Assembly (NCBI RefSeq): GCF_001194135.2
Contig: NC_068989.1
Span: forward strand, 71,946,439 to 71,978,816
Source of the DNA: Octopus bimaculoides
Taxonomy: Eukaryota
Reading direction: 5' to 3'
DNA: 32,378 nt
Shown here: piece after piece, positions 6,409 to 30,532 of the stretch
Layout of the letters: each line of letters starts with the position of its first letter
How positions within the stretch are numbered: the first letter of the stretch is position 1
The notes under the pieces: generated by a model
The model's database searches: none
What the model was told of the DNA's origin: nothing
Seen by the model: the letters and a program-made list of their open reading frames with translations, nothing else
Program-made: the position numbers and the translations under genes

Positions 6409-6410
6409 TG

Positions 6411-7703: not shown

Positions 7704-7920
7704 TGAGTGGCGAGAATCGTTAGCACGCGCCGGGCAAAATGAATGCTTAGCGGTATTTCGTCCGCCCTGACGTTCTGAGTTCAAATTCCACCGGGGCCGA
7801 CTTTGCCTTTCATCCATTCGGGGTCGATTAATAAGTTACGCATTGGGTCGATGTAATCGACTTCACCCCTTCCACCAAATGTCAGGCCTTGTGCCTAGAG
7901 TAGAAAGGATCATTATCATT
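7704..7920 (+). mobile_element. Family 1 SINE
   Basis: Head GAATCGTTAGCACG, B-box, central block, and tail GGCCTTGTGCCTAGAGTAGAAAGGATCATTATCATT. Confidence 0.88.
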
Positions 7921-9114: not shown

Positions 9115-10540
9115 AGAAATATGGCACCTTATCTTTACCAGGGGATTTCCACTTATGAATCTTTGTGAATGTCATCCTTAGGTCTGCTATTGTGATGTCT
9201 TCCCATGCTTGTTCTCATAAACTTTGGTAGGATCCTTCTGTGCATCTAATCCAATCTGCAATTTCACTGTATGTCTTTTCATCGATCTAAATATTTTTCT
9301 AAAAGTCTTCAGCTTCTTCCATGGGAGCGGGGTTTCAACGGTTATTTTCTTCCTACGCTATTTCTCTGTAGAATGTTTTCGTATTGGATGTGAACAGCTT
9401 ATTTTGCTTGTAAAATTTGCTTCTTTTCTCAAATCTTCGTAGTTTTTGAGCTTTTACTTGGACTTTTTGTGGCAGTGTTTTTTTTGTTGAAAGCATTTCT
9501 TCTCTTGGTGAGAATCTATATTTTCTTTTCATCTTTTTTCCTTTTCTGGATCTTACATTGTTTCCACAGATTAGTTCATTTTATATTGATATTTCACCTC
9601 TCATTAATTCAATCTCTTTTTCAATTTCACTTCTCCAGTTTGGAATTTTTTCCAGGTTTGGTTTTCTTTGATTTTTCGGGGGCATACAACTTGCTTCAAT
9701 TGTCTTAGTAGACGAGTAAATAATTTCTTGTGACTCAGTAAGATCAAGTTTTGATTTGTGTATGATTTCTTTTGTTACATAGTGACCAATTAAAACTTTT
9801 TTTTTGTATTTTGTATTTTATTTGAGAGTTTATGAAGTAGTTCTCTATCATGCATATTTGCATATCTTACTGTAAGCTTATTCAAGATTTTTTGCTTCAT
9901 TTCTATCATAGACACTATGTTCTTCAGAAAATGTGTGGTCTTCAAATACTGTTTTTTTTTACCACTTTCCTGGTTATCTTTGTCAGGTTCAATACAATTT
10001 ATTTCTTCAGGCCTTTGAATGTTTTGGTCAGATGACAGTCTTTCAATTAAGACTCGTGGAGGGTTGCTCACTTCATCTGATTCTTCATTTTCTTCCTGCC
10101 TTATATTTAGATCATTTTCCACTTCGTGCTTGATCGCAGTTATTTCACTATCTGTGAGTCTATTATTCCTAAAGATGTCCCTCCTAACATTTGCTAACTT
10201 GTTTTCTACCAAATAGGGTTTGCTGCCTTGATTTCGTGTTCTCCATATTTGATAAGAGTTTGCGGTGTGTCTCTCTTGAGATGGCTTACCAAATGCATAG
10301 TAATAAGCACATGTTACTTCTTTATGTTCTTTACAGGTGTATTTGATCCTCTTACATTTTCTTACTGGAGTGGCTGTGGTGGTGAACTTAGAGGGCACAA
10401 ATTGGGGCAGTTCCCGTTCAAGTGACCATCCAGGTTCGTATTCAGAGATGAATTTGTGCCAGTGGATGACTTTTCGACTCTAAGCTAGCTCTCTCCTGAG
10501 GGACGCGTTTCCAGATTAACCATAGGACAAGCGATTTGGT
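9115..10540 (-). mobile_element. 5' half of an R4/Dong-like RLE non-LTR retrotransposon, decayed and ending at the RT start
   Basis: CAYYYAFGKPSQ..SYQIWRTRN..NKLANVRRDIFRNNRLTDSEITAIK, then NKLFTSNTKTFYR, WI, and DIT..L...HKWKSPGKDKVP-FWL, which is the R4/Dong N-terminal to pre-RT motif series. Confidence 0.75.
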
Positions 10541-11258
10541 GTTACAGTTTTAATTTTCCTTTTTGTTTCGGAAGATATTTTGTGCTACATTAATATTATT
10601 AATATTGATCCCTGTGTGGCTGATGTAGAAACAGTTATTAGCTCTATCACTATTGTCACCTCTGCCATGATTACCATTAAAATTATCTCTTCCATGCCAT
10701 TACAGCAGCATTGGCCATCGTTAGTTACCAGCACTGTCGCAGTCTCAATCCACGCGGCCACGCTTTGTAGCCATGGCAAGTGTTGCTGTTATCATTGTTG
10801 CTATGAGCTGCTGCTGAGGACAGGCATAATCAAATTAAATCTGTCAGGTTTGCTCCTACAACTGTGAAGGATTATTAAATGTTTAGTTTCGACTTTTACC
10901 TTGTACTTGAGATAATCATAAATAGATGAGGGTTCGTGGGAGGAAGAGAAGCAGCCTAGTGGACACAGCCAAATTACACCAGTCTGTAAAGAGGTCCAGC
11001 AAATGCTGACAAAGAGATCAACAACGGCGCAGGCGCACCTCTGTGGGATCAACAAAGGAGCGATCATATCCATGAAGTCAGCAGAGGTCAAATATGTGTT
11101 TAGTACCACAGCGGTCTATGAGAGCGGTGGGAGATCTTGGAGAGAACCAACCCACCTTGTTCTGTTTTAATTACCGATGGAACTTTCAATACATCTCGAC
11201 GCTTCTAAAGCAACCTTTGTTTGCTGACTTTCAACGTAAGCTGAATTTCACACACACG

Positions 11259-11322
<64 letters not shown>

Positions 11323-11790
11323 NNNNNNNNNNNNNNNNNNNNNNNNNNNNNNNNNNNNNNNNNNNNNNNNNNNNNNNNNNNNNNNNNNNNNNNNNNNNNN
11401 NNNNNNNNNNNNNNNNNNNNNNNNNNNNNNNNNNNNNNNNNNNNNNNNNNNNNNNNNNNNNNNNNNNNNNNNNNNNNNNNNNNNNNNNNNNNNNNNNNNN
11501 NNNNNNNNNNNNNNNNNNNNNNNNNNNNNNNNNNNNNNNNNNNNNNNNNNNNNNNNNNNNNNNNNNNNNNNNNNNNNNNNNNNNNNNNNNNNNNNNNNNN
11601 NNNNNNNNNNNNNNNNNNNNNNNNNNNNNNNNNNNNNNNNNNNNNNNNNNNNNNNNNNNNNNNNNNNNNNNNNNNNNNNNNNNNNNNNNNNNNNNNNNNN
11701 NNNNNNNNNNNNNNNNNNNNNNNNNNNNNNNNNNNNNNNNNNNNNNNNNNNNNNNNNNNNNNNNNNNNNNNNNNNNNNNNNNNNNNNNNC

Positions 11791-12686
11791 AATTAACTGG
11801 TCTTTTCGGGAGGACTTTCGGCCTAGGGACTATGGATAATTTTCAAAAATCCCTGATGTGGCAGTGCTACCGAGAAGCTCTGCTGGTTAGAAGCAAGCTC
11901 AAGAGGCACAGAAGTGATGTCGGACGGACATGTCTGAGATGAGCACAGAGCGATGAAACCGTTCTGCATGCACTCGTTCTTTGTTCAAGTATTGATGAAT
12001 TGTGGAGCTTTTGTCGAACAGCTTTTGTCGAATAGCTTTTGTCGAATAGCTTTTGTCGAATAGCTTTTGTCGAATAGCTTTTGTCGAACAGCTTTTGTCG
12101 AATAGCTTTTGTCGCGTGTGGGACAAATCCAGTTATCGGTCGAGTCCATCGTAAGGATCGTCCGCTGCCATGCTTTTGGCCTATAAGTACCGGCAGTTTC
12201 CCTCTGCCTGGTGGCTATGGTGAAAGAGATAGTGTGGTGGGCGAAGTTGAAAGTGCTGAAGACAGATACTTTCCTCTTCAGCCAAGTCCTCATCGACTTT
12301 TTCAAGTTCTACTTGAGAGAAAAGAGGTGAGGGTAGAGAGGGAAATGCTGTTCCCCAGTATTTTTGCAGAAAGACAGGTGAATGTGGCGAGGATGGCCCG
12401 TGTGGATGGGCTTACTCTGAACATGCGCCTGGAGATCGAAGGGGATGAGGAGGAGTAAGGTTCCTGTCTGGGCTGCCCTTGGTGGTTGAGGTGACCACGA
12501 TATGTGGCGTTCCTTGATTGGCTCTGGGTGGAACTCTTTCATTTGGGGAATTTTATTGTTTAAATTTTATACACATGTGACTTTTTGCTAAACCCCACTT
12601 GTCCCTTGTTTTGTTTTGTCCTTTTTTGTCTTGTGTTCGACTCTTGTGGCCAATAAAAAAACAAAATTATTATCATTATCTTTATT
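11791..12686 (+). mobile_element. L1/Tx1-like LINE 3' part (5' end in gap 11323-11790)
   Basis: MDNFQKSLMWQCYREALLVR and ETVLHAL; RKEVRVEREML..ERQVNVARMARVDG; the 3' end is CTCTTGTGGCCAATAAAAAACAAAATTATTATC. Confidence 0.85.
12007..12114. repeat. 14-bp minisatellite GCTTTTGTCGAAYA x7.7
   Basis: Seven full units plus a 10-bp partial unit, inside the LINE coding remnant. Confidence 0.97.
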
Positions 12687-12897
12687 AAGGCGGCGTGCTG
12701 GCAGACTCGTTAGCACGCCGGGCAAAAAGCTCAGCGGCATTTTCACCCACCTTCACGTTCTGAGTTCAAATTCCGCTGAGGTCGACTTTACCTTTTATCC
12801 TTTCTGGGTCGATATAATAAGTACCAGTTTAGTGCTGGGGGTCGATGTAATTGACTTACCTCATCCCCCAAAACTGCTGACCTTGTGCCAAAATTAA
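12687..12897 (+). mobile_element. Family 1 SINE (tail type A)
   Basis: Complete head, B-box and central block, directly after the LINE tail. Confidence 0.9.
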
Positions 12898-13035
12898 TTA
12901 ATTTAGTTATTTTTAAGATTTGAGTACATTTATCTAAATTAGATATACGTATTCACGATAACAATGTTTGTTTTACATTTGCTGGTTTGCTTCAGATCTG
13001 CGTGATTTAAATTGCATTATATTTCTACATCCCGC

Positions 13036-13073
13036 ATGGAGAACAGTGATCATGAACTCGCATCTAAAGCAAG
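13036..13073 (+). CDS. Putative first coding exon of the SLC16-like gene (MENSDHELASKA + AG; exon about 12996-13073)
   Basis: Unique non-repeat island with acceptor TTTGCTTCAG at 12995, ATG at 13036 and donor AAG|GTAATT. It ends in phase 2, matching the phase-2 acceptor TGTTTAG|T at 20664/20665. Confidence 0.4.
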
Positions 13074-13310
13074 GTAATTAAGCATTATATTTTCTGTATA
13101 TAATTTTTGTACTACACCCAATATTTAGAGAACCTCAGCACTTTTATTTATATGTATTGTTGTTTTTGTTCAGCTCCTGGTTAGTTCTAATCGTGAAGAC
13201 CTCTGATTAACGGGTGTCCCAGTTACGAACAAGTCTTTGTTCTTTCCTTATCTACAGTGCCCTATCTTATCCACTAACGTGTGCCTTATTTATTTATTTA
13301 TTTATTTATA

Positions 13311-13542
13311 AGGCGGCGAGCTGGCAGAATCGTTAGCACGCCGGGCGAAATGCTTAGCGGTGTTTCGTCTGCCGTTACGTTCTGAGTTTAAATTCCGCCG
13401 AGGTCGACCTTGCCTTTCATACTTTCGGGGTCGATAAATTAAGTACCAGTTACTCACTGGGGTTGATGTAATCGACTTAATCCCTTTGTCTGTCCTTGTT
13501 TGTCCCCTCTATGTTTAGCCCCTTGTGGGCAATAAAGAAATA
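13311..13542 (+). mobile_element. Full-length family 1 SINE (tail type B) with 12-bp TSD
   Basis: The TSD AACGTGTGCCTT is at 13276-13287 and 13543-13554, with (ATTT)n between the 5' TSD and the head. Confidence 0.95.
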
Positions 13543-13780
13543 AACGTGTGCCTTTTTTGCAAGACTGCAATTTATAATTTAAGGGTGATGTGGCTGCTAT
13601 ATCTTATATGAACACCAACTACGTAGATGGTCACTCAATAGGTTGGCACATTAGGTATATATTTAGCTGTTACCGGCGTTGTTGTTATTTCCAAGGAAGA
13701 TAATATTTACCCGTTGAAGACTGGAAACAAATAACATTGTTTTATGATGCTCATTTACAATCACCACACACACACGTATA

Positions 13781-13889
13781 TACGATATCTATCTATACGA
13801 TATCTATCTATACGATATCTATCTATACGATATCTATCTATACGATATCTATCTATACATGCATACATACATACATACATACATACATA
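13781..13889. repeat. 15-bp tandem repeat TACGATATCTATCTA x5, then (TACA)n
   Basis: Directly visible; it forms the tail region of the adjacent minus-strand SINE. Confidence 0.95.
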
Positions 13890-13890
13890 C

Positions 13891-14034
13891 GACGTGCTTC
13901 TTTCAGTTCATGTCATCCAAATCTACTCACAGGGGCTATAATAGAAGAAATTTGCCTAAAGTGCTACACAATGGAATTGAACCCGAGCCCACATGGTTGG
14001 AAAGCAAGCTTCTTAACCAGACAACCATGCCTAC
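13891..14034 (-). mobile_element. tRNA-derived CORE-type SINE (family 2)
   Basis: Minus strand GTAGGCATGGTTGTCTGGTTAAGAAGCTTG..GGGTTCAATTCC..GCACTTTAGGCAAATTTCTT (A box, B box, CORE-like block). Confidence 0.75.
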
Positions 14035-14440
14035 ACTCATTTGAATTTATTTTAGTTTTCTGATTTACGCTGTGTTGTGCATAAAATAGACGTTATTTAA
14101 TTAATAACGAGTCGTCAAATCACAGCTGTAAAAATTAGGGTATCCTCTTTAGCGCTAGCTTAATACACGACTACCATATTTTGCCACTCATCTGTAAAAT
14201 GGGCTGGCGAAGGAAGCTGGTACATCTCTGAAGAGCACTCAACTAACTGTGAAACGCTTCGCCAGGAGATTTCTTCTGTTTCTTTTTATTCGTACACGAA
14301 TATTATAAAAAGAATGTTATTTAAATCACAGTGAGGCTTTCTAGTGTTTGAATTGTTTAATAAAACTGCAACTTTGTAGATCGTTTGAGTGGAGGTGGAA
14401 ATCTTTTTCGAATGCACATATACACACATATATATATATG

Positions 14441-14508
<68 letters not shown>

Positions 14509-14821
14509 ATACTTTTTTCGTTGTATATTGTATTCGTTTTTTTTTGTATGTTATTTTTATAATTATTTATCTTCTATATAAATGATCCGTTAATTTATTG
14601 CTTTTCTCTACATAAACCGAGCAGACACCTTGCGGAACAGTATTTATTTTAACAAGTTATATCTAATTATCATCCGAAGTGACACATCTACACCGTCCGA
14701 TGCTCCGAAACCAGTTAAGTATCTCACCCGTGAGGGATCGATGCTAGATGGGTCGAAACAATTGTCGTGATTAATAAATATTCTCATATCTTCCGCCTCT
14801 CCCCCCTCTCTCTCATTAACC

Positions 14822-14858
<37 letters not shown>

Positions 14859-14860
14859 TA

Positions 14861-14896
<36 letters not shown>

Positions 14897-15776
14897 NNNN
14901 NNNNNNNNNNNNNNNNNNNNNNNNNNNNNNNNNNNNNNNNNNNNNNNNNNNNNNNNNNNNNNNNNNNNNNNNNNNNNNNNNNNNNNNNNNNNNNNNNNNN
15001 NNNNNNNNNNNNNNNNNNNNNNNNNNNNNNNNNNNNNNNNNNNNNNNNNNNNNNNNNNNNNNNNNNNNNNNNNNNNNNNNNNNNNNNNNNNNNNNNNNNN
15101 NNNNNNNNNNNNNNNNNNNNNNNNNNNNNNNNNNNNNNNNNNNNNNNNNNNNNNNNNNNNNNNNNNNNNNNNNNNNNNNNNNNNNNNNNNNNNNNNNNNN
15201 NNNNNNNNNNNNNNNNNNNNNNNNNNNNNNNNNNNNNNNNNNNNNNNNNNNNNNNNNNNNNNNNNNNNNNNNNNNNNNNNNNNNNNNNNNNNNNNNNNNN
15301 NNNNNNNNNNNNNNNNNNNNNNNNNNNNNNNNNNNNNNNNNNNNNNNNNNNNNNNNNNNNNNNNNNNNNNNNNNNNNNNNNNNNNNNNNNNNNNNNNNNN
15401 NNNNNNNNNNNNNNNNNNNNNNNNNNNNNNNNNNNNNNNNNNNNNNNNNNNNNNNNNNNNNNNNNNNNNNNNNNNNNNNNNNNNNNNNNNNNNNNNNNNN
15501 NNNNNNNNNNNNNNNNNNNNNNNNNNNNNNNNNNNNNNNNNNNNNNNNNNNNNNNNNNNNNNNNNNNNNNNNNNNNNNNNNNNNNNNNNNNNNNNNNNNN
15601 NNNNNNNNNNNNNNNNNNNNNNNNNNNNNNNNNNNNNNNNNNNNNNNNNNNNNNNNNNNNNNNNNNNNNNNNNNNNNNNNNNNNNNNNNNNNNNNNNNNN
15701 NNNNNNNNNNNNNNNNNNNNNNNNNNNNNNNNNNNNNNNNNNNNNNNNNNNNNNNNNNNNNNNNNNNNNNNNNNNN

Positions 15777-15826
15777 TATTGAGCACGGTGTGCTAACGAT
15801 TCTGGCAGCTCGCCGCTTTTGCGATT
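15777..15826 (-). mobile_element. 5' head of a family 1 SINE running into the gap
   Basis: The reverse complement is GCGGCGAGCTGCCAGAATCGTTAGCACACCG. Confidence 0.75.
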
Positions 15827-15960
15827 TGTGTAATTGGCAAGCAAAAGTACAACTGTGCAGAAATTCTCAATAAAATGAGACTTTGCCTATTATCTATCTC
15901 TATTTCTGAGTTGCACATGAAATAATGGTTTCAAATTTTAGTAGAGGACCAACAGTTTCG

Positions 15961-16213
15961 GGGGAGAAGAGATGATTACATCAATCCCAGTACTTAAATG
16001 GTACGTATTTTATCGAACCTCGAAATGGTACGTATTTTATCGATCTCCGAAAGGACATGTATTTTATCGATCTCCGAAATGGTACGTATTTTATTGACCT
16101 CGCTTGGATGGAAAGCAAAGTCGCAGTCGGTGTAATTTGAACCCGAAGACAGACAAAATACCGCTAAGTATTTTTTTCCCGGCGTGCTAATGATTTTGCA
16201 AGCTCGCAGCCTT
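15961..16213 (-). mobile_element. Family 1 SINE with a 4 x 27-bp internal tandem amplification
   Basis: The head is at 16170-16213. Units like AAATGGTACGTATTTTATCGATCTCCG span 15996-16102. Confidence 0.8.
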
Positions 16214-16320
16214 GAAATGTGATACATGTAATAATGCAAATCTAGTTTTTTCTAAATCTGTATGATGCTGATTCTGCATGCGAATTACAGAAAGGTTACA
16301 TCTGTCTTCGGAATATTAAC

Positions 16321-16450
16321 CTAGTGGTTATGGCTGTGGGACTCACAGTCGTTATGTTGTGGGTTCGATTATCGAACTTGGACGAGAATTGTGTCCTTGA
16401 GGAAAGCACTTCATCCCATTTTGCTCCAGCACACTTAGCTGAAAATCAGT
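16321..16450 (+). mobile_element. Degenerate CORE-type SINE
   Basis: TAGTGGTTA, GGTTCGATT and GTGTCCTTGAGGAAAGCACTT. Confidence 0.6.
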
Positions 16451-16479
16451 GTCAGCAACAGTTGAAATGTTCATAACAG

Positions 16480-17050
16480 ACTTCCTTCACGCTCTCGTAT
16501 CCCCTTAGGTAAAACTATGCAGTGTTCAAATAAGCAGTGCCTTAGCCTTATCAAAAGAAAGTAGATGTCTTCTTTCTTTAGAATTTTTCTAACCACATAG
16601 GTATCCACGGGGCAGCAAATTTCGATAATAAAACATATTTTCCTTGCGGACCCATAAAACAATATCTGGCCGGTTGTGTTTTAACTTGGTGGCTGCTATA
16701 ATTGTCAACAATATTCTTTTGAGCCATCCGTCTCAATATTGTCAAATTCATCTACAGACACTTGTTTTTGTTACCCTGTTCCAGACTGTTCTGCGTAGTA
16801 CGTCATATCTCATAAGAAGATGACATGTGGAAAACATTATCTCGCAGCTGGCAATAATGTGGTTGATGTCCTCAATCTTTGTCTTGTACAGTCTACATTT
16901 GTTGTCTATCGATGTTTTCTGCCTTTTATGCCGCAAGTACTTGGTGGTACCGAATATCGTGCTTTGACAATTCCATTTCAGATGATTGTGATAACGGTGA
17001 AAAAAATATCCATGTTAATTTATTGATGCATTCAGGCAAGTCAATGTCTG
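16480..17050 (-). mobile_element. 3' part of an R4/Dong-like element: zinc-knuckle and restriction-like endonuclease remnant
   Basis: TTKYLRHK..DNKCRLYKTKIEDINHIIASC..R(Y)D (decayed CCHC), then HNRPDIV and FIIEICCPVDTYVVRKILKKEDIY (PD-(D/E)xK-type RLE). Confidence 0.75.
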
Positions 17051-17310
17051 TATTATCAAGCAATTTCCCAAAAAATGTTTTTAAAAATTTCACAAATCTG
17101 CAAAAATCCGGTACAAATTATTTATGGTTCAAAACGTTGCTTACTTTTTACTCAACCTGATATATATATATATATATATATCGTGTTCTTCATTTCTTTT
17201 TACTTATATTTCTTTACGACCACTTTCTCAATAAATTTTTTTAGTCTAATACTAATATTGCGTTTCGATTTTTTTTCTTAACCATTTTCTGACTCTAAAC
17301 TCCTTTTAAA

Positions 17311-17502
17311 CCTAAAAAAGGGCCAAAACTATGTAATCAGCCTTTTTTAAAGGCATTTTAAAAGTTAAAACTATAAATTCAGTATTTTTTTAACTCTAAA
17401 GTAAAGCAAAAAAAAAAAAAAAACTATAGCTTTTGGGTTCTAAAGCCCTTAAAAAGGCTAAAAAAAAAAGGTTGATTTTATAGTTTTGGCACTTTTTAAA
17501 GG
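17311..17502. repeat. Imperfect AT-rich inverted repeat (foldback-like)
   Basis: CCTAAAAAAGGGCCAAAACTAT..CCTTTTTTAAAGGC pairs with GCCCTTAAAAAGG..ATAGTTTTGGCACTTTTTAAAGG. Confidence 0.6.
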
Positions 17503-17530
17503 TGTTTTTAGGTGTTATTTTTTCTATAAT

Positions 17531-17672
17531 AAAAATTGGCGTTAACGGTTTATCGAAAACTTCTGTTACATTTTTAAAGAATTAACTGATTAACGGTTAT
17601 CGAAGTTAGCTTTTTGGTTAACCGAGCAACGGTTAACGAAGTTAACTTTTCGATTAACGACGCTCACCTTTG
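17531..17672 (-). mobile_element. Possible DNA-transposon (hAT-like) end with clustered GTTAAC/TAACG subterminal motifs
   Basis: The minus strand begins CAAAGGTGAGCGTCGTTAATCGAAAAGTTAACTTCGTTAACCG, with repeated short subterminal motifs. The superfamily call is inference. Confidence 0.4.
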
Positions 17673-17852
17673 AAATTTATGTATTACATTGTCTACCAAT
17701 TCTACGATATATTTTTCATGATATCTGTTTATTATTTATTGTTATTGTTATTAACACATATTTTCACACGACAGCTATGCCCTCCCTTACTTACAGCGTA
17801 TAATCTCTAAATTTTCTTTACAGTTTTATAATTTTTATAGTGCTATTATCTC

Positions 17853-17963
17853 CCTTTTAATTACCTTTATAATTCATATATAGCATTTATTATCAGTTTA
17901 ATACTGTTTACCTTTTAATTACCTTTATAATTAATATATGATATTTATTATCAGTATAATACT
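17853..17963. repeat. Direct tandem duplication, 58-bp period
   Basis: CCTTTTAATTACCTTTATAATT..ATTTATTATCAGT.TAATACT occurs at 17853 and 17911. Confidence 0.85.
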
Positions 17964-19272
17964 ATAATTTTGCGGTTTTATAGGAGGTTTTTTTCATTTC
18001 CATTCATTAGGTTCCAAATTCCTTAATAGAACCCCACTACCCCTTTCATCATTAAAACCTCACCTAAAAAAAAAAAAAAATAAAGGATAGAAGGGACCGG
18101 TAAGTAAATAAATAATTTAAAATTCAAAAATTCAAAATTACCAATCAAGACCTTAAAATGAGATTGCCGCTTAGAACTAAAATAAAATAAACTAAAATAG
18201 AATAGAATAAAATAAAATAAAATAAGAATTTAATTTGTTGAGGCTACGGGCCTAAAGATTCTATTATCGAACAACTTAATGCATGTATAATGGTGGCTAA
18301 TTTTCGTCAACCCACCCCACCCAAATTTCTGGCTTTGTGCTTAAAGTAGAAAGTTTTATATCTTGACAAAAAAAAAAAACATAAACACACAGACACGCAT
18401 ATACTACCATCCCTAATATGCAAACAAGCTACTCCCAACGTGCATCCGCCCACACAGGCAGAAAAAAATATACACACTCCACATAAACAAGTAGTCTCAC
18501 CACACACTCACAGACTCTCCTGTCTTAAAAAAAACCCCACATTTTCTACCTCTCTCCAACTTCCGGTCAGTTACTTTTCGGCCATGAAACAACGCACGGC
18601 CTTTTCTCCGGACTATCTGCTCCTTTCTCCCTTTCCTTCTTTCTGGACATTTTCCTCTTTCCGACGAAGAGCCATATTCGAAACGGCTTTTCCGCTCCTA
18701 TTTTTCCATCTAAAATTTACACTGAGCATCAATTTAATAGATTCACTGTTTCCGTCTAATTCACTTCTGTTGTTTTCCTTGTTTTTTTTATTTGCCTATA
18801 TNNNNNNNNNNNNNNNNNNNNNNNNNNNNNNNNNNNNNNNNNNNNNNNNNNNNNNNNNNNNNNNNNNNNNNNNNNNNNNNNNNNNNNNNNNNNNNNNNNN
18901 NNNNNNNNNNNNNNNNNNNNNNNNNNNNNNNNNNNNATATAGAGAGAGAGAGAGAGAGAGAGAGATAAAACTTACTTGGGAAAGGATGCGTGGCGTTAGA
19001 TCATATAATAATATAAATAATATATAAACATATGCATATATCCATACATACATGTACATACCTACATCTATATGTATACATACATGCATATAGGGGTACA
19101 GGACATCACAAAAAACGTTAAACACAATGAGAAACGGAAACATAAAGACGAAAACAGAAAACGAACTTTTTTCGAACAACAAAAAAACAAACAAACAGAG
19201 AAACGAGACAGGCAACATAAAGAGTATAACCATATGCATATGTTTATATATTATTCATATTATATATATATA

Positions 19273-19440
19273 TATCAATTGATAATTAATGGTACTACAG
19301 GTAGTACCAGCATGCTAAAATAGCTGTCAAAATTACTCAAACCACAAGTTTTCACTCTAACACAAGGGTGAAGGCGGGCATTTGGACTGCTATTTTAGCA
19401 TGCTGGTACTTCCTGTAGCACTCTTAATTATTAATTGATA
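19273..19440. mobile_element. MITE-like element with 61-bp imperfect terminal inverted repeats and a 46-bp spacer
   Basis: 19273-19333 matches the reverse complement of 19380-19440 (TATCAATT.ATAATTAA..GT.CTACAGG.AGTACCAGCATGCTAAAATAGC.GTC.AAAT). Confidence 0.75.
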
Positions 19441-19841
19441 ATTTCACCTTTATGGGTTTTTTACGCATGCTATGCTACTGATATATTATAAACAATAATA
19501 TCCTTATATATATATTGTTGTTTTTCGGAATGGTCATTTTTTTCTGTCAAAAAAAAAAGAAGAAAAAAAGAAAAATACCATCTGAAATACAGCAATATCT
19601 GTTTCAACACACGATTTTACATAAGGAATCTTGTAAAACGATTTGATAACGTGTATATATGTATGTGTGTGAATAGTTTTGTTAAACGGTGTCGAGTTTT
19701 ACAATTCTGTAAATAATAATAATGGTATTTTTATAAGCTTAAAGCTTATAGCGATCACCGTGCAATGACTAAGGAAAATAGTCTAATAATGGAGCATTTA
19801 TATGCCCCAAGACCTCGACAGAAAAAAAAAAGTAGGATTTT

Positions 19842-19915
19842 CCATCTGCGCAGGACTCGAACCCACACCCCTTTGTTAACGCAACTAAGTGTGTTACCGA
19901 TTACGTCAGCGAACT
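19842..19915 (-). ncRNA. tRNA-like Pol III unit, left arm of the palindrome
   Basis: A-box-like TGACGTAATCGG, B box GGTTCGAGTCC and a cloverleaf-like fold. A T-run terminator follows (A11 on + at 19822-19831 region). Confidence 0.55.
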
Positions 19916-20068
19916 AGCTTGCTTCTTGTTTTCACATTTAAGAACTATATTAGTTCGTAGTTGTAAACAAACTCTATGTGCTTTCGGTGCAGATGTACAT
20001 AGAAGTTTGTTTACTAAAAACAACTACGAACTAATGTAGTTCTTAAATTTGAAAGCAAGAAGCAGGCT

Positions 20069-20142
20069 AGTTCGCTGGTGTAGTCGGTAACACACTTAGT
20101 CGCGTTAACAAAGGAATGTCGGTTCGAGTCCCACGCGGATGG
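20069..20142 (+). ncRNA. tRNA-like Pol III unit, right arm of the palindrome
   Basis: Acceptor AGTTCGC/GCGGATG (6/7 paired), D arm GTGT-AGTCGGTA-ACAC, T arm with TTCGAGT, atypical 9-nt anticodon loop, and TTTTT at 20156-20160. Confidence 0.55.
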
Positions 20143-20300
20143 AAAAGCCACTTTCTTTTTATCTGTCGGGGGCTTACATGCCCCACTATTAGACTATATT
20201 CCTTAGTCATTGCACGGTGATCGCTCTAAGCTTATAAAATACTATTATTATTATTACTTACAGAAGTGTGTGTGTATGTATATATATATATATATATATA

Positions 20301-20373
20301 TATAAAGTGAAGTATATTGCCACTTAAATGTGGCTGACCCCTAGGGGTGGATGTTACTGGTCAGCCACATTTA
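20301..20373. repeat. Second copy of the (TA)n-anchored repeat terminus, with a local 15-bp inversion
   Basis: Matches about 26-85 inverted. TAAATGTGGCTGACC (20325-20339) and GGTCAGCCACATTTA (20359-20373) are exact reverse complements. Confidence 0.8.
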
Positions 20374-20650
20374 NNNNNNNNNNNNNNNNNNNNNNNNNNN
20401 NNNNNNNNNNNNNNNNNNNNNNNNNNNNNNNNNNNNNNNNNNNNNNNNNNNNNNNNNNNNNNNNNNNNNNNNNNNNNNNNNNNNNNNNNNNNNNNNNNNN
20501 NNNNNNNNNNNNNNNNNNNNTATATATATATATATATGTAAAATACTTTATTTATACCTCTTAATTCCTAATCCAACTCTCGTTATTTCATCAAACAAAC
20601 AAAAAATTTATGCAGATCCATATGTCGTGCTTATTCTTATTTCTATTTCC

Positions 20651-20864
20651 ATGGCATTGTTTAGTGAAAAACCTCAACTTACATGGTGTAAAAAAGCGGA
20701 AGCTATTCTGGTGGTCGCCTCTGCTTTCGTCTGCAACGTTTTGGTTCACAGTGTCATTGTATCACTTCATCTGTATTTTGCTGAACTGATTCGAGAATAT
20801 CCAAATAACCGTGAACTTATATCAGTAATTATATTCTTACCACTAGTAGTTTATGGATTAATAG
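20651..20864 (+). CDS. SLC16/MCT-like MFS transporter, exon encoding TM1-TM2 (starts at ATG 20651 or at acceptor 20665)
   Basis: ILVVASAFVCNVLVHSVIVSLHLYFAELIREY..LISVIIFLPLVVYGLIG matches the MCT TM1-2 pattern. The phase-1 donor G|GTAAGT at 20864 is at the intron position typical of SLC16 genes. Confidence 0.8.
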
Positions 20865-21049
20865 GTAAGTTAAACATGATTGTTTTCATTGCGATTAATC
20901 ATAGTCACCGATACGTGGATACCTCTATTATTACTTTTTTTTTTGAGCCATTAAACTCAGTGCTTAAATATTTTTAAAGTTCAGCCGGCCACCTCCAGCA
21001 AGTGAGTATGGCTTGCTAATATGTACCATACTTTCTCTGGTTGTTCTAG

Positions 21050-21297
21050 GTGCCTATGTAGTCGCTAGCAGACAGAAACCTTCTTGGCCCCGTCACCTTT
21101 GATTCAGTGGACACCCAAGATACCACAGTTAGCAGGAGAGAGGGCTGAATCAATACCCAGCTGCTACACATAATAGCTGAATTGGCTAGTGCAACAGGAA
21201 ATGGAGGAACTTGCTCAAGGATACACCGCGTCACTCAGTCCTGGAATTCAATCCACGATCGTATGATTATAAGTCGAACACCCTAACCATTATGCTA
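21050..21297 (-). mobile_element. CORE-type SINE in an intron
   Basis: Minus strand TAGCATAATGGTTAGGGTGTTCGAC..GGATTGAATTCC..GTGTATCCTTGAGCAAG. Confidence 0.7.
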
Positions 21298-22565
21298 ATT
21301 TTTCCTGCTTTCTCAGTCACTATAATTCGCGCCTACTGGTGAACATCTACTTAGTAGTTCTCACATCGCTGCTTCGGTGAGTTGCTGCGGGTTGTGTATG
21401 AGTATCATCTCTCGCAGTCTCATCTTTACTAAGTGGCCATCCTTTATCACCATGTCGAATGTTTGTCAGCACTCTGAAATAAAGAATGAAACTGCGCTAT
21501 CCCTCCCCCCTCTCTCTCTCTCTCTCTCTCTCTCACCTCATTATTACACTGTCTGCTCGAATGACTGCCTGTCCTACACGATGTTAACAACCGATTATTT
21601 TTCTCTCGCGCTCTGTGTCAATATTCCACTCATTTATTCTAATTTTGCTAACCAGTGCCTGCTGGATGACAAACCAATGGTTTTGAATAAATAATAAGTT
21701 ATATGTCATGTTAGTTGCATTTTCGTTGTATGTTACCCTGGGAGTTGAAAGCAGTGGCTGCACTGAGAGCGGTGAAAGAGATTGAAAGAAAATATTGTAA
21801 GAATAGGTAGATGAGAGAGAGAGACGGGGAGAGGGAGAGAGAAAGGAAGAAAGAAAGAGATAAAAGGAGGGTGAGAGAGACAATCATATATAAATGTAAT
21901 TATATATATGTGTGTATATATCACCTGCTCTTTCTTTTACTCCCTATCTCTCAAAGCAGTATTTGCACAGAAAGGCAAGTTTTTATATCCAACTTTACAT
22001 AAATGTCTTATTAGAACACCGAATACTGCGTTATTCACCCTGGGAGATCCTCTCATGTAGGTGCTTCATGCACAAAAGCATAAACATAGATCGTAGCAGA
22101 CGAGAGGTGTCTGTCATGAGCACCAGAGCTCCGATATCCCGTGGTTTCATTCTGCTGGAAGCTGTCAGTGGGAGATGTCTGGTCACTGCATGCCAGTCAT
22201 ACACACACACACACACACNNNNNNNNNNNNNNNNNNNNNNNNNNNNNNNNNNNNNNNNNNNNNNNNNNNNNNNNNNNNNNNNNNNNNNNNNNNNNNNNNN
22301 NNNNNNNNNNNNNNNNNNTATATATATATATGTGCATATATATATATATATTATTTATATTATTATATATATGTATGCATATATATGAATATATATATGT
22401 GTATGTGTCTGTGTCTGTGTGCGCCTGCGCGTATGTGTGTGTATTCATTCACCTTTGGGTCCCAAGTTAACCAACAAGAAATACTGGAATATAATAAATG
22501 GGCAATTCACATAATTTATTTTCGTTTAGAATTAATTTCATATTGCATAATTTAACATTTACTTT

Positions 22566-22812
22566 GGCGGTAAGGTAACAGAATCGTTAGTGTGTTGGGC
22601 AAATGCTGAATAACCCTTCTTGTGGCTCCTATGTTTTCAATTCATATTCCGTCGCTACGTTCTGGGTTCAAATTTCGCCGTGGTCGACTTTGCCTGTCAT
22701 CCTTTCGGGATCGATGAAAGAAATATCAGTTATGCATTGGGGTCGATATAATCGACTAGTCCCCTTTTCCCCAAATTTTCAAGGCCTTATGCCTAGAGAA
22801 GAAGAAATAATA
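22566..22812 (+). mobile_element. Family 1 SINE in an intron, with a rearranged head
   Basis: CAGAATCGTTAG head, central block and GGCCTTATGCCTAGAG tail. Confidence 0.8.
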
Positions 22813-22822
22813 ATTTTTTATT

Positions 22823-23010
22823 AAGGCGGCGCGCTGGACGAAATGTTTAGCGGTATTTCGCTCGTCGTTACGTTCTGAGTTCAAACTCCGCCGTGTGACT
22901 TTGTATTTCATCCTTTCGGGGTCGATAAAATAAGAACCAGCCTGGGGTCGATGTAAATGACTTAAGCCCCTCCCCCAAAATATCAGGCCTTGTGCCTATA
23001 CTAAAAATAG
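22823..23010 (+). mobile_element. Family 1 SINE ending about 50 bp before the splice acceptor
   Basis: AAGGCGGCG head with an internal deletion, B-box and central block. Confidence 0.85.
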
Positions 23011-23059
23011 AGAAAAATCAAAATAATATACTAACATTTACTTGTGGCTTATTTTTTAG

Positions 23060-24121
23060 GTAAAGGCTGTTCATTTGTGTACTTCTCTCTGAACGTGGCT
23101 CTCTTTACATACTTTCCAAATGCTGGTCGCCAGTTGGTCTCCTTGGTCAGTGTTGGTGAAGGTGTTTGTTTTATTTTTGCTCTTCCTTTCATCTCATACT
23201 TCATTGAATCTTACGGCTGGCGTGGTAGTTTGCTTTTACTGTGTGGCATGGAAATGCACTGCCTTCCGTTCGGACTTATCTACAGTATGAAAGTAGACAT
23301 CACGCATGGTAATCGCATAATGTCCAATCGGCCTAAAAGAGCAGCCATACGTACGACCTCGTTTTCTGAAAGCAAGAAAAATCGATTTGCATCTAACGAG
23401 AACCATGCAAATCATCCCCAAAATAACGAGAGCAAAAAAGATCAATGCGAACCGTATACAACTGCTACAATAAATAAAGCTTTTGAAGACACAGAATGTG
23501 ATGATGCTAATAGCTGTGATAATGGTTCCACAAACTATAAACCAAAACATTTAGACTCACCACAGATGAATGACTCGCATATAACAAATGATGACGACAG
23601 CCAGATTGAAGAGGAGCAACCCGAGTCCAAGCAAAAGCAAGGCATTACTTTAAAAACCTGGAAAAGATTAGCCACAAATAAAATGTACATATTAACTTTA
23701 ATATCGACGGTCACATTTCTTAGTACGTCATTGGTCATGGTAACGATTCTCCCCGATTTTTGCATGCAGCACGGATTGTCACTCTCACAAGGAGCTTGGA
23801 ATAGTGCAATAGCTTCAGTAGGGGATATCATCGCACGTCTTGTGGGTTCCTGGCTTCTTCATTCGAAACTGCTACCGAGCATAGTGATTTTTTCCTCAGC
23901 GATCATCGTATGTGGGATTACAATGTCGGTCTATATTGCCGTAAACACACCGACGTATATTACTCTGACCTCGTTCTTTTTCATGCTATTCAATGGACTT
24001 GCTTACTCTCAGTATGGTGCAATCTTCTTGGATCTTGTCGATTTAGAGGACTATCCTCTGGGGATCGGCCTGAACGAAACTTCTGCTGGCATTGGTCTCT
24101 TATTGTGTGGTTATCTCATTA
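23060..24121 (+). CDS. SLC16/MCT-like MFS transporter, main exon (TM4 end to TM11 and the large central loop)
   Basis: A 363-aa ORF with YF..GR, SYGWRGSLLLLCG (TM6 signature), a long hydrophilic loop, and GDIIAR (TM8 D/R pair). The acceptor is TTTTTTAG|GT (phase 1) and the donor is ATT A|GTAAGT (phase 1). Confidence 0.92.
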
Positions 24122-24360
24122 GTAAGTATCTCTAAACATTTTTGATATTTCAACAAGTGAATGGGCAGGTGTGTAGATTTGCGCATATATGTCTAAATGT
24201 ATATGTGTATGCATGCATGCTGTCTATATATGGGTTCTTGCATACGTATATGTATTTAATAAGCAAACCGAAACCGCTTTGATTCAATAGCATACATGCG
24301 TATGAAAATGAGACCACCTGATGGATTACTCTGTTTTTGAAGAGTACAAATTTATTATTT

Positions 24361-24464
24361 TTAGACAAGAACATTATCAACAGTGACTTCAATGTTTCGG
24401 TTATTCCGATGATGGCTTAATTACCCGAAACTTCGAAGTCACTGTCAATAATATTCTTGTTTAA
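24361..24464. repeat. 43-bp imperfect inverted repeat (36/43) with an 18-nt loop; head-to-head PLE-like termini
   Basis: Arms are 24361-24403 and 24422-24464. The loop and right arm contain CCGATGA..GAAACTTCGAAGTC. Confidence 0.75.
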
Positions 24465-24541
24465 GTATAAAGATTTATACGTATGTATGTATGTATGTAT
24501 GTATGTATGTATCTATCTATGTATGTATGTATGTATTATTT

Positions 24542-24690
24542 AGGCGTCTGACTGGCAGAGTCATTAAGGTGACGGAAAGATTACTTTACAGTAATCTTTC
24601 TGACTCTAGGCCCTGATTTCAAATCCTGCAGAAATCAACGTTGCCTTTCTATTTCTCGTGGTCGAAAAATAAAGTACCAAGCCTGTTCAG
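24542..24690 (+). mobile_element. Old, degenerate family 1 SINE
   Basis: GGCGTCTGACTGGCAGAGTCATTAAG..GATTTCAAATCC..GTTGCCTTTC..GGTCGAAAAATAAAGTACCA. Confidence 0.6.
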
Positions 24691-24763
24691 GTGCTTATTC
24701 TTGCTTTTCCCTCGTTGTTTGTTTCTGTCCATCTGTTTGTCTTTCTACCGCTTGAAAGGAATC

Positions 24764-24801
<38 letters not shown>

Positions 24802-25958: not shown

Positions 25959-26175
25959 AAGGCGGCGAGCTGGCAGAATCGTTAGCACGTAGGACGAAAT
26001 GCTTAGCAGCATTTCGACCGTCGCTACATTCTGAGTTCAAATGCCACCAAGGTCGACTTTACCTTTCATCCTTTCGGGGTTGATAAATTAAGTACCAGTG
26101 AAACACTGGGGTCGATGTAATCGACTAGTCACCTCCCCAAAAATTTCGGGCCTTGTGCCTAGAGTAGAAAAGATT
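25959..26175 (+). mobile_element. Family 1 SINE with a probable ATTAACACAC TSD
   Basis: Complete head and central block. ATTAACACAC occurs at 25943 and 26173. Confidence 0.9.
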
Positions 26176-26308
26176 AACACACACACACACACAAGTATAC
26201 TTATATACTTAGCCGAGCTATTAGATTTAATCTTGATTTTTAAAAAAATGGCTGATGAATGTTTACGTAGTTTTTCTTCATTTTTTTTTTTATCTTCTAC
26301 TTCTTCAG

Positions 26309-26769: not shown

Positions 26770-26851
26770 CGACGACGATGAGATTCGAACTCACGCTGGG
26801 AGACCCCAATGGATTAGTAATCCATCGTGCCAACCACAGGATCACCTCGTC
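26770..26851 (-). pseudogene. tRNA-Ser(GCT)-derived pseudogene; anticodon now ACT
   Basis: GACGAGGTGATCCTGTGGTTGGCACGATGGATTACTAATCCATTGGGGTCTCCCAGCGTGAGTTCGAATCTCATCGTCGTCG is 82 nt and colinear with metazoan tRNA-Ser(GCT). The D arm is disrupted and there is one acceptor mismatch. Confidence 0.8.
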
Positions 26852-29533: not shown

Positions 29534-29601
29534 TTAGGGAAATTTCGAACCTGGGTTCTCATTCCTAAGATATTTTTCGATGTTATTAATTATTATTATT
29601 A

Positions 29602-30084
29602 TTGAGTGAGAGAGCAGTGCATGCCATCAAAGTGACACTGGGGTAAAATATACGAAGTCCAATATACCCATCATGACTACCTGTCTGATAAGAGTACACC
29701 AGGCACATGCATCACAACCATATGTACGTGACATGGTGATCTCATATCAAGATAAACAGCGCATGACCTCGCAGGTGGGGCCCATTTAGAATTTTCTTCA
29801 GGTCGGGCAGCCCATCCTGCGCAAAAGGTCCCTGAATATTATTATTATTATTGAGTGAGAGAGCAGTGCATGCCATCAAGGTGACACTGGGGTAAAATAT
29901 ACGAATCCCATTATACCCATCATGACTACCTGTCTGATAAGGGTACACCAGGCACATGCATCACAACCATATGTACGCGACATGGTGATCTCATATCAAG
30001 ATAAACAGCGCATGACCTCGCAGGTGGGGCCCAGTTAGAATTTTCTTCAGGTCGGATAGCCCATCCCGCTCAAAAGGTCCCTGA
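29602..30084 (-). mobile_element. Head-to-tail dimer of a 234-bp (AAT)n-tailed retroposon-like unit
   Basis: Copies at 29602-29835 and 29851-30084 have identical ends and 11 substitutions. Both end CTCTCTCACTCAATAATAAT on the minus strand. Confidence 0.85.
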
Positions 30085-30532
30085 TTATTATTATTATTAT
30101 TATTATTGTTAGTCAGGTCACTGCCTAGAATCGAACTCGGAATCTGTACAAAAACGGTTTGAGGTCATTTCTTTGACCCGAGCGTCTAAAAAAAAGAAAG
30201 AAATACTTTTCTCAGAGTAAGAGAGTCACATTCCAACCACGTATCTTTTCGGAGAGACGCAGACACATTGCAGCCTCTCCGTTGGCAACGCCAGTATAAA
30301 TTCTCACGAATTGTATTTTTCTTTTTGTTCATGGTATGTCCTTACAAATCTTCTTTTCTCGTATTATTCCTTTCTCTTCGAAGAACTATGCAGCATCTTC
30401 TTCCGTCTTTACTTCATCCAACAAACAGGAAAGGCTTAAAGTGGCCATCTCTCGTCACTGTTCTAAAATTGAATTCCTACTGTTATGAAAACAAACAATT
30501 ATGGTACACGCGGTGGTTACACACGTTGTGTG

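What the first reader, a model, noticed from the sequence alone, without database searches (positions are those of the whole stretch)
19705..20265. 561-bp palindrome carrying two divergent tRNA-like Pol III genes with terminators
Seen directly: roughly 275-bp arms around a 13-nt spacer. Each arm holds a 74-nt tRNA-like unit (19842-19915 minus, 20069-20142 plus) with A and B boxes and a T-run 14-20 nt downstream. The two copies together imply a perfect ancestral T stem (GTGGG/CCCAC). The 5' half resembles tRNA-Val, but the anticodon loop is 9 nt. This is not a normal SINE (no LINE tail, terminator right after the tRNA) or a normal tRNA gene. Inference: a foldback or MITE-type element whose arms are Pol III units, or an old inverted duplication of a tRNA-like ncRNA gene. 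Read-through transcripts would form long dsRNA. This is one of the two best candidates for an undescribed system here.
Basis: partly seen in the sequence, partly recalled or inferred. Interest (0 to 1): 0.75.

Follow-up and report, generated by a model that had tools for sequence, protein, structure and literature searches.

The report
Old inverted pair of SINE-like repeats
The palindrome is real, but it is two decaying head-to-head copies of a common tRNA-derived repeat, found only at this locus, evolving like its flanks and with no transcripts seen, so it is ordinary.

Summary
Arms of about 275 nt (19701-19979 and 19997-20269) are 90.8% identical. Each carries a 74-nt tRNA-like unit at the stated coordinates, with a B box and a downstream T-run.

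It is not an assembly artefact. Exact unitigs from three independent studies span the centre, and three other species labels hold a single-copy orthologous version.

The "undescribed system" reading is not supported.
- **Arms:** each arm is a copy of a dispersed repeat family of tens to hundreds of copies, also present in four other species labels. The tRNA-like part, T6 run, body and (ATT)n tail all belong to the family consensus.
- **Centre:** it is single-copy, and other copies continue upstream into non-palindromic sequence. The palindrome is therefore not a mobile foldback or MITE unit.
- **Origin:** the arms share six states that differ from the family majority, which favours one local inverted duplication predating the species split.
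- **Constraint:** orthologue divergence (8-9%) is no lower than the flanks (about 6.8%). The sister species carry an independent 65-nt central deletion.
- **Expression:** three RNA-seq runs give no read on the unique centre.
- **tRNA status:** neither unit passes tRNA thresholds.

One oddity remains. The family has a consensus T6 run, a shared leader and a 35-nt direct repeat, so it is not a textbook SINE.

The parts
19701..19979 (-). Left arm: one copy of the dispersed tRNA-derived repeat unit (leader, tRNA-like part, T-run, body, ATT tail), read on the minus strand
   Evidence: Inverted-repeat alignment to 19997-20269, 90.8% identity. Family reads cover it.
19980..19996 (-). So-called spacer. 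It is really the 5' continuation of the left unit (rc = ACATCTGCACCGAAAG). The short perfect palindrome ATGTACAT at 19993-20000 marks the junction with the right arm.
   Evidence: The family's upstream consensus ...CCATTCGCACCGAAAGCATATAGA from X1 contigs aligns to rc 19963-19995 at 88%.
19997..20269 (+). Right arm: second copy of the same unit, cut at its 5' side at ACAT (19997) and ending in (ATT)4 and TTACAGAAGTGT
   Evidence: family read depth.
19842..19915 (-). Degenerate tRNA-like unit (left), B box at 19853-19863
   Evidence: Rfam RF00005 at 12.4 bits, E = 3.4, below the gathering score of 29. ARAGORN finds it only at relaxed threshold.
20069..20142 (+). tRNA-like unit (right), A-box-like 20076-20087, B box 20121-20131
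   Evidence: Rfam RF00005 at 27.1 bits, below the gathering score of 29. ARAGORN finds nothing at default.
19822..19831 (-). T10 run, 10 nt downstream of the left tRNA-like unit (A10 on the + strand)
   Evidence: Sequence. The family consensus has T6 here: GGAAAGCCTTCTTTTTTCTGTCGAGGGC.
20152..20160 (+). T3CT5 run, 9-13 nt downstream of the right tRNA-like unit
   Evidence: Sequence; same family consensus.
19916..19979 (-). Left leader (sequence upstream of tRNA +1), shared with part of the family
19997..20068 (+). Right leader. Read depth is 25-65 against about 1 at the single-copy centre.
19701..19821 (-). Left body plus (ATT)n tail (ATT repeats at 19712-19723): the highest-copy part of the family
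   Evidence: Depth 500-760 in raw reads at >=85% likeness. Loose ends continue ...CCCTCGACAGAAAAAAGAAGGCTTT into the tRNA flank.
20161..20269 (+). Right body plus (ATT)4 tail (20244-20255)
19656..19700 (-). 3' extension of the left unit beyond the palindrome. It includes a 35-nt direct repeat (19656-19689) of the sequence that precedes the leader.
   Evidence: Family pieces reach 19667-19677. The repeat alignment scores 18 against 8.4 +/- 1.4 for shuffles, with 0 of 2000 shuffles reaching it.

Best explanation
This is a unique, old, local inverted duplication: a head-to-head pair of one resident copy of a dispersed tRNA-derived, SINE-like repeat. It now appears to be decaying neutrally.

Each arm is a near full-length family unit made of:
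- a leader of about 50-70 nt;
- a 74-nt tRNA-derived module that still has A and B boxes;
- a T-run;
- a body of about 110 nt;
- an (ATT)n tail.

The inferred history has three steps.
1. One copy was duplicated in inverted orientation. The likely route is fold-back priming or template switching at a short inverted microhomology; ATGTACAT sits at the junction.
2. The centre then lost sequence asymmetrically. The right unit starts 17 nt later than the left one.
3. The arms drifted apart by about 10%.

The duplication predates the split from three related species labels. These keep the locus as single-copy DNA but have their own 65-nt central deletion.

Shown: the palindrome is real, the arms belong to a family, the locus is unique, it has orthologues, there is no extra conservation, and there are no long-RNA reads.

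Inferred: the mechanism of duplication, and the conclusion that the locus has no function. The units keep Pol III promoter boxes and T-runs, so occasional Pol III transcription of short tRNA-like RNAs remains possible but untested.
For: 1. Real and single-copy.
- Exact unitigs across the centre come from three studies at single-copy depth.
- Raw-read depth at 19970-20005 is about 1.

2. The arms are family members. Raw-read depth, against about 1 at the centre:

| Part | Depth | Likeness |
|---|---|---|
| Leader | 25-65 | >=80% |
| tRNA 3' half | 160-230 | >=80% |
| Body | 500-760 | >=85% |

- Loose-end consensus on both sides of the T-run shows one contiguous family: TTCTTTTTTCTGTCGAGGGCTTATATGCCC and ATAAGCCCTCGACAGAAAAAAGAAGGCTTT.
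- The same family is present in organisms B-E.

3. The palindromic form does not recur.
- No palindromic joints appear other than the locus itself.
- Other copies continue upstream as CCATATAACAAAACCATTCGCACCGAAAGCATATAGA or as A-rich unrelated sequence.

4. The arms are closest relatives. Both differ from the family majority in the same way at 20053, 20056, 20063, 20069, 20141 and 20143 and at their mirror positions.

5. Age.
- Arm-to-arm K2P is 0.099.
- A 440-nt single-copy unitig in organisms B and C, and a 363-nt one in D, equals 19763-19985 joined directly to 20051-20293.

6. No constraint. Orthologue divergence is 9.0% (20/223) and about 8%. Flanking unitigs give 5-8.9%, mean about 6.8%.

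7. Not a working tRNA. Rfam scores of 27.1 and 12.4 bits are below the gathering score of 29, and the consensus has G33.

8. No transcripts. Three RNA-seq runs give 0 reads on 19904-20007 and no read at >=99% likeness. The reads on the tRNA part come from other copies: those on the left unit from a single copy embedded in a longer transcript.
Against: - The shared states could also mean that two insertions came from the same subfamily.
- Read depth is only a rough proxy for copy number. It depends on how far the window's copies lie from the consensus.
- The RNA libraries were ordinary cDNA RNA-seq, sampled at about 6% each. They would miss ~90-nt Pol III products and small RNAs.
- No orthologous unitig was seen in organism E, which has the closest flanks at about 5% divergence, though that run has low coverage.
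- Both units keep a perfect B box after about 10% decay. This is compatible with chance (11 nt) but is not proof of neutrality.
Confidence: 0.72

Rival explanations
1. Two independent insertions of the same repeat subfamily landed head to head at nearly the same site. There was no duplication event.
For: - Each arm is close to a full family unit, and the inner ends of both arms lie near the family's 5' boundary at about 20003-20016.
- The family has hundreds of copies, so nested or adjacent insertions are expected.
- The window carries many other SINE copies.
Against: - The arms share six minority states against the family consensus.
- The left unit's 5' part runs through the 'spacer' straight into the right unit, with no unrelated target DNA between them.
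- No target-site duplications can be seen around either arm.
Confidence: 0.17
2. The whole 561-bp palindrome is a mobile foldback or MITE-type transposon whose long terminal inverted repeats are Pol III units.
For: It has long inverted arms with a short centre. MITEs and many unclassified SINE families are reported in octopus repeat annotation (PMC13282606), if the window is indeed from a cephalopod, which was not tested here.
Against: - The centre 19970-20005 is single-copy at >=80% likeness, while the arms are multi-copy.
- No other 'opposite strands' joint exists near the centre.
- Other copies continue upstream in non-inverted sequence.
- The left unit extends about 45 nt beyond the palindrome's outer end.
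- There is no target-site duplication at 19700/20270.
Confidence: 0.03
3. It is a functional locus. Either it is a divergent pair of Pol III genes for a ~90-nt tRNA-like RNA, or it is a hairpin-RNA source for small RNAs or ADAR editing, perhaps acting on the MFS transporter gene downstream.
For: - Both units have intact B boxes, and A-box-like sequence and T-runs lie at the right distances.
- The family consensus folds as a cloverleaf.
- The hairpin potential is extreme, z = -42.
- The locus has been kept in several species.
- It lies upstream of an MFS exon.
Against: - It is no more conserved than its flanks.
- The sister species deleted 65 nt of one arm.
- The arms carry unshared substitutions that break stems: the left unit scores 12.4 bits.
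- Three runs gave no RNA-seq read on the unique part.
- Rfam miRNA hits are far below threshold, 44 against 101 bits, and simply reflect any long hairpin.
Confidence: 0.06
4. It is an assembly artefact: a fold-back chimera next to a scaffold gap.
For: The window is a gapped draft with 9 N-runs, one of them (20374-20520) only 105 nt from the right arm.
Against: - The arms differ by about 10%, so they are not a copy of one read.
- Exact centre-spanning unitigs come from three independent studies.
- Raw reads cover the centre.
- An orthologous two-armed unitig is present in three other species labels.
Confidence: 0.01

Closest known systems
Closely spaced inverted SINE pairs, such as inverted Alu repeats in primates
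   Same: Two copies of one tRNA- or small-RNA-derived interspersed repeat lie in opposite orientation with a short spacer. They can form a hairpin or cruciform in DNA and long dsRNA if transcribed. Such pairs are unstable when identical and closely spaced, and are tolerated once they diverge or the centre becomes asymmetric (PMC10164571, PMC7999016). dsRNA from inverted repeats is the main ADAR substrate across Metazoa (PMC5625713).
   Different: Here the two copies appear to come from one local duplication rather than two insertions. No transcript or editing was seen. The repeat is tRNA-derived, not 7SL-derived.
Small inverted duplications formed by fold-back or template switching
   Same: The arms are each other's closest relatives, a short spacer lies between them, and a short palindromic microhomology (ATGTACAT) sits at the junction. 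These are features of the fold-back model (PMC3907307). Later central deletions also fit; the sister species have an independent 65-nt one.
   Different: The scale is about 0.3 kb per arm, not kilobases to megabases, and it is interstitial. The mechanism is inferred from anatomy only.
tRNA-derived SINEs
   Same: It has a tRNA-related module with A and B boxes, hundreds of dispersed copies shared by related species, a simple-repeat (ATT)n tail, and a copy number that rises towards the 3' end. A second, more typical tRNA-derived SINE occurs at least 9 times in the same window.
   Different: The consensus keeps a T6 run right after the tRNA-like part. Many copies share a 50-70-nt leader upstream of tRNA +1, and a 35-nt direct repeat brackets the left unit. 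No LINE partner, core domain or target-site duplication could be checked.
Foldback elements and MITEs
   Same: Long inverted arms, small size and no coding capacity.
   Different: The two-armed unit does not recur in the genome. It has no fixed ends and no target-site duplication.

Membership tests
Functional tRNA gene | Covariance-model score at or above the curated threshold | tested here: not met
   RF00005 scores 27.1 bits (+ copy) and 12.4 bits (- copy) against a gathering score of 29. ARAGORN at default finds neither.
Functional tRNA gene | Canonical 7-nt anticodon loop with U33 and an intact anticodon stem | tested here: not met
   Even the rebuilt family consensus gives G33, an A.A mismatch and an extra base at the 26/27 junction. 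The alternative fold has a 9-nt loop.
tRNA-derived SINE | tRNA-related head with internal Pol III A and B boxes | tested here: met
   B box GGTTCGAGTCC is perfect in both copies, the A-box-like TGGTGTAGTCGG is present, and Rfam aligns the full tRNA model positions 1-71.
tRNA-derived SINE | Dispersed, multi-copy, and shared by related species | tested here: met
   Depth is 25-760 times the single-copy centre in raw reads. Copies sit in different contig contexts in organisms A-E.
tRNA-derived SINE | Element starts at or near tRNA position +1, the Pol III start | tested here: not met
   Most copies that hold the tRNA 5' half also hold the leader, and some extend still further upstream.
tRNA-derived SINE | No Pol III terminator inside the element | tested here: not met
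   A consensus T6 lies 11 nt after the tRNA-like part and before the body. Whether T6 stops Pol III in this organism is not known.
tRNA-derived SINE | 3' tail of simple repeats or poly(A), or shared with a partner LINE; target-site duplications around single copies | tested here: inconclusive
   An (ATT)n tail is present in both arms and many copies end there. The partner LINE and the target-site duplications of other copies cannot be read with these tools.
Foldback or MITE-type transposon | The whole inverted-repeat unit recurs at many loci with the same ends | tested here: not met
   The centre is single-copy, no further palindromic joints appear, and other copies are single arms.
Foldback or MITE-type transposon | Target-site duplication flanking the unit | tested here: not met
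   The left flank is ...GAGTTTT and the right flank is GTGTGTAT, a microsatellite. The left unit runs on past the palindrome's end.
Inverted duplication or inverted repeat pair | Two homologous segments in opposite orientation, far beyond chance | tested here: met
   E = 5.8e-66 within the window, and 90.8% identity over 261 nt.
Inverted duplication or inverted repeat pair | Arms more closely related to each other than to other family copies | tested here: met
   Six shared departures from the family majority. No full phylogeny was possible.
Hairpin-RNA, miRNA or endo-siRNA locus | Transcription through the hairpin and small RNAs derived from it | tested here: inconclusive
   There are 0 RNA-seq reads on the unique centre in three runs sampled at about 6% each. 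No small-RNA run was available. Rfam miRNA hits are far below their gathering scores.

The most novel reading that the evidence does not exclude
The repeat family may not be a retroposed SINE. It could be a set of tens to hundreds of complete Pol III mini-genes, each with leader, tRNA-like RNA and its own T6 terminator. These would have spread together with their flanks by some non-SINE route, such as capture in a DNA element or in the 3' end of a LINE. This head-to-head pair upstream of an MFS transporter gene might then yield tRNA-like RNAs or, by read-through, a ~270-bp hairpin RNA feeding small-RNA or ADAR pathways.
Probability: 0.07. Interest if true: 0.45.

Novelty: new member of a known kind. 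Interest (0 to 1): 0.13.

Why it matters
It matters little as a system. It is one more inverted pair of interspersed repeats in a repeat-rich genome, with no sign of selection or expression.

It is of modest use as a dated example of how a short palindrome survives. Asymmetric loss at the centre in one lineage and an independent 65-nt central deletion in sister species fit what is known of palindrome instability.

The only point worth a transposon specialist's time is the odd build of the underlying repeat family. It has a consensus T-run straight after the tRNA-like part, a shared upstream leader and a 35-nt direct repeat. That question can be settled quickly with a complete genome assembly.

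Tried and rejected
**Steps that yielded nothing**
- Looked for a third copy of the arm in the window: none.
- Asked whether homology continues beyond the right end or across the gap at 20374-20520: only microsatellite-level matches.
- Searched for small-RNA (miRNA) libraries of the organism: none listed.
- Scanned public metagenome contigs for the best-conserved body motif, to obtain real sequences of other copies: 0 hits.
- Tried to lay RNA reads on 20521-24801 to test the downstream gene model.
- Tested whether a putative first exon (20651-20864) extends the MFS_1 match: it did not.

**Readings I dropped**
- The Rfam miRNA-family hits on the centre (mir-5014 and others, 44 bits against a threshold of 101) are generic long-hairpin matches.
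- I first read the loose ends after 19898 as showing that copies start at tRNA +1. Those ends are the leader family itself (note 3).
- I considered that the T-run was the poly(A) tail of an independently inserted antisense retroposon. I rejected this because nearly all body copies continue A6-GAAGGCTTT into the tRNA flank, so it is one family.
- I considered a tandem array of ~340-nt units. In the window only 35 nt of a 'next unit' follow the left arm, so this is not shown.

**Not done**
- The organism was not identified. Run labels are coded, and I ran no further search on it.

Full report
**1. The observation**

The window is a gapped draft scaffold of a eukaryote with nine N-runs, one of them at 20374-20520. 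The inverted repeat is real.
- The repeat finder reports colinear inverted blocks at 19809-19964/20020-20175 (86%), 19742-19800/20175-20233 (92%) and 19701-19735/20235-20269 (80%).
- A gapped alignment of rc(19701-19979) with 19997-20269 gives 261 aligned positions, 90.8% identity, K2P 0.099 and 30 gap columns.
- blastn of one arm against the window gives E = 5.8e-66 for the other arm and no third copy.
- Folded as one RNA strand, 19701-20269 would form a ~270-bp hairpin: -356 kcal/mol against -125 +/- 5.5 for shuffles, z = -42.

- Rfam's tRNA model aligns end to end to 20069-20142 (+) at 27.1 bits and to 19842-19915 (-) at 12.4 bits. Both are under the gathering score of 29.
- ARAGORN at default finds neither. 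It finds only an unrelated tRNA-Ser-like gene at 26770-26851.
- The B box GGTTCGAGTCC is perfect in both copies.
- T-runs follow at 10-14 nt: T10 at 19822-19831 on the minus strand, and T3CT5 at 20152-20160.

**2. Not an artefact**

Logan unitigs identical to the window span the centre in runs from different studies. X1 and X4 give 241 nt (19875-20115), and X13 gives 137 nt (19935-20071). All are at the depth of neighbouring single-copy unitigs. Raw genomic reads cover the centre at about single-copy depth.

**3. The arms are copies of a dispersed repeat family**

Raw DNA reads of three runs were each sampled to roughly 0.7x. Depth, against about 1 at the centre (19970-20005), is as follows.

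| Part | Depth | Likeness |
|---|---|---|
| Leader, 20018-20077 | 25-65 | >=80% |
| 3' half of the tRNA-like unit | 160-230 | >=80% |
| Body, 19757-19777 | 500-760 | >=85% |

- Where alignments break at the T-run, the loose ends agree on both sides. From the tRNA side they read TTCTTTTTTCTGTCGAGGGCTTATATGCCC (68-80 reads per run). From the body side they read ATAAGCCCTCGACAGAAAAAAGAAGGCTTT (145-225 reads per run).
- The tRNA-like part, a T6 run, the body and the (ATT)n tail are therefore one family unit. The 'terminator' is a consensus feature of the family, not a property of this locus.
The rebuilt consensus is accepted by ARAGORN as a cloverleaf (CGT anticodon, G33, one A.A mismatch), so the module is clearly tRNA-derived but degenerate.
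- The same family occurs in four other species labels, organisms B-E.
- The window also holds at least nine copies of a different, more typical tRNA-derived SINE. tRNA-like repeats are thus commonplace here.

**4. The palindromic form is unique**

- The centre is single-copy.
- No 'opposite strand' joints appear near it other than the locus's own unitig.
- Contigs of other copies continue upstream of the leader either into CCATATAACAAAACCATTCGCACCGAAAGCATATAGA or into unrelated A-rich sequence, never into an inverted arm.
- That upstream consensus matches rc 19963-19995 at 88%. The 16-17-nt 'spacer' is therefore simply the 5' continuation of the left unit, and the right unit begins 17 nt later, at ACAT (19997). 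The junction sits in the short perfect palindrome ATGTACAT (19993-20000).

**5. One duplication rather than two insertions**

At 20053, 20056, 20063, 20069, 20141 and 20143, and at the mirrored left-arm positions, both arms carry the same base while the family majority carries another (with the alignment). Arm-specific changes number about 4 on the right and about 10 on the left. This makes the arms each other's closest relatives. Two insertions from one subfamily cannot be excluded without a full phylogeny, and I give that 0.17.

**6. Age and selection**

- Organisms B and C hold a 440-nt single-copy unitig, and organism D a 363-nt one. It equals window 19763-19985 (20 mismatches in 223, no gaps) joined directly to 20051-20293.
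- This is the orthologous palindrome carrying its own 65-nt deletion of the right leader. The duplication therefore predates the species split, which fits the arm-to-arm K2P of 0.099.
- Flanking single-copy unitigs of the same species differ from the window by 14/188, 36/581, 15/300 and 33/371, about 6.8% overall.
- The palindrome, at 8-9%, is no better conserved than its surroundings.
- Central deletions in both lineages fit the known instability of short-spacer inverted repeats, which falls as spacer length and divergence grow (PMC10164571, PMC7999016).

**7. Expression**

Three cDNA RNA-seq runs of the same species, about 6% of each read, give no read on 19904-20007 and no read at >=99% likeness anywhere in 19800-20180.

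The reads on the tRNA-like part come from other copies. All those on the left unit carry 19868 C>T and 19881 G>A and share one loose end, ATTATATCTGTTTTAATAAAG..., so they come from a single copy inside a longer transcript.

RNA contig sets of 15 further runs share no sampled word with 19830-20160. No small-RNA library was available. Short Pol III products and small RNAs therefore remain untested.

**8. Surroundings**

- The left unit continues about 45 nt beyond the palindrome, to about 19656-19677.
- The right arm ends in a (TG)n(TA)n microsatellite. This is followed by an extremely abundant hairpin-bearing repeat and the scaffold gap.
- An MFS-type transporter exon lies at 23044-24135 on the + strand (Pfam MFS_1, 2.3e-14).
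- An ORF with a canonical GT donor at 20651-20864 may be its first exon, but Pfam did not confirm this.

**9. What stays unexplained**

The family is not a textbook SINE.
- Its consensus has T6 before the body.
- Many copies share a leader upstream of tRNA +1.
- A 35-nt direct repeat brackets the left unit: score 18 against 8.4 +/- 1.4 for shuffles, 0 of 2000 reaching it.
- Depth rises from leader to tail, as with 5'-truncated retroposed copies. It may also reflect how far the window's copies lie from the consensus.

SINE, 3' end of a LINE, or DNA-level repeat cannot be separated without the genomic copies and their flanks.

**10. Verdict**

The interpretation as a new system is not supported. 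This is an old, unique inverted duplication of a common tRNA-derived repeat, with no sign of constraint or of long transcripts. Novelty: a new member of a known kind. Interest is low.

Noticed in passing
window 20305-20373 (and, reverse-complemented, about 53-110): An extremely abundant repeat with an internal hairpin (TAAATGTGGCTGACC...GGTCAGCCACATTTA), always next to a (TA)n run. Raw-read depth is about 10,000-20,000 against about 1-3 for single-copy DNA. It abuts the scaffold gap at 20374, and family reads continue TTGCTTTTAGCCCCAGGAGGACATCTCCTC.
   Followed up: partly
window 6220-6812, 7731-7910, 12727-12905, 13338-13527, 22629-23011, 24580-24686, 25987-26176: At least nine copies of another, more typical tRNA-derived SINE, with head ...GCTTAGCGGTATTTCG...GTTCTGAGTTCAAATTCCGCCG and body ...GGGTCGATGTAATCGACT...CCTTGTGCC. 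One copy ends just before the acceptor of the MFS exon.
   Followed up: no
window 26770-26851 (-): A tRNA-Ser-like gene with anticodon ACT at 32 bits, just above the Rfam gathering score of 29, with several non-standard pairs. It may be a pseudogene or another SINE head.
   Followed up: no
window 23044-24135 (+) and 20651-20864 (+): A large exon of an MFS-type transporter (Pfam MFS_1, 2.3e-14). A possible first exon (MALFSEKPQ..., GT donor at 20865) begins about 380 nt plus a gap of unknown true size downstream of the palindrome. Pfam did not confirm it.
   Followed up: partly
window 19585-19639: A separate very high-copy segment, with contig depth about 4 times that of the arm body, present in all five species labels. 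Family copies diverge from the window on both sides, at 19593 and 19639.
   Followed up: no
window 19273-19333 / 19380-19440, and 19008-19039 / 19232-19263: Two further inverted repeats just upstream: 61 nt at 89% with a 46-nt loop, and 32 nt at 97% flanking 192 nt. Short palindromic or MITE-like structures are common in this AT-rich stretch.
   Followed up: no
loose ends of runs X21-X23 at window 19728, 19785, 20034 and 20306-20329: The perfect palindrome AGGTTCGTCCATCGATCGATGGACGAACCT recurs as the unaligned part of reads in the three 'GENOMIC OTHER' libraries only. It is probably a library linker or ligation junction, not genome sequence.
   Followed up: no
window 19798-19852: A 325-nt unitig of run X5 (2025 study) spans 19778-20115. 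It differs from the window at 15 sites plus 13 gap letters; all nine substitutions and four deletions that the tool lists for that unitig alone lie in this stretch, and five of the nine substitutions go towards the family consensus. It could be a divergent allele, gene conversion from a paralogue, or a graph path.
   Followed up: no
window 29589-30086 and 11992-12128: A 249-nt tandem duplication (two copies, 95%) and a 14-nt tandem array (AGCTTTTGTCGAAT, about 9 copies).
   Followed up: no
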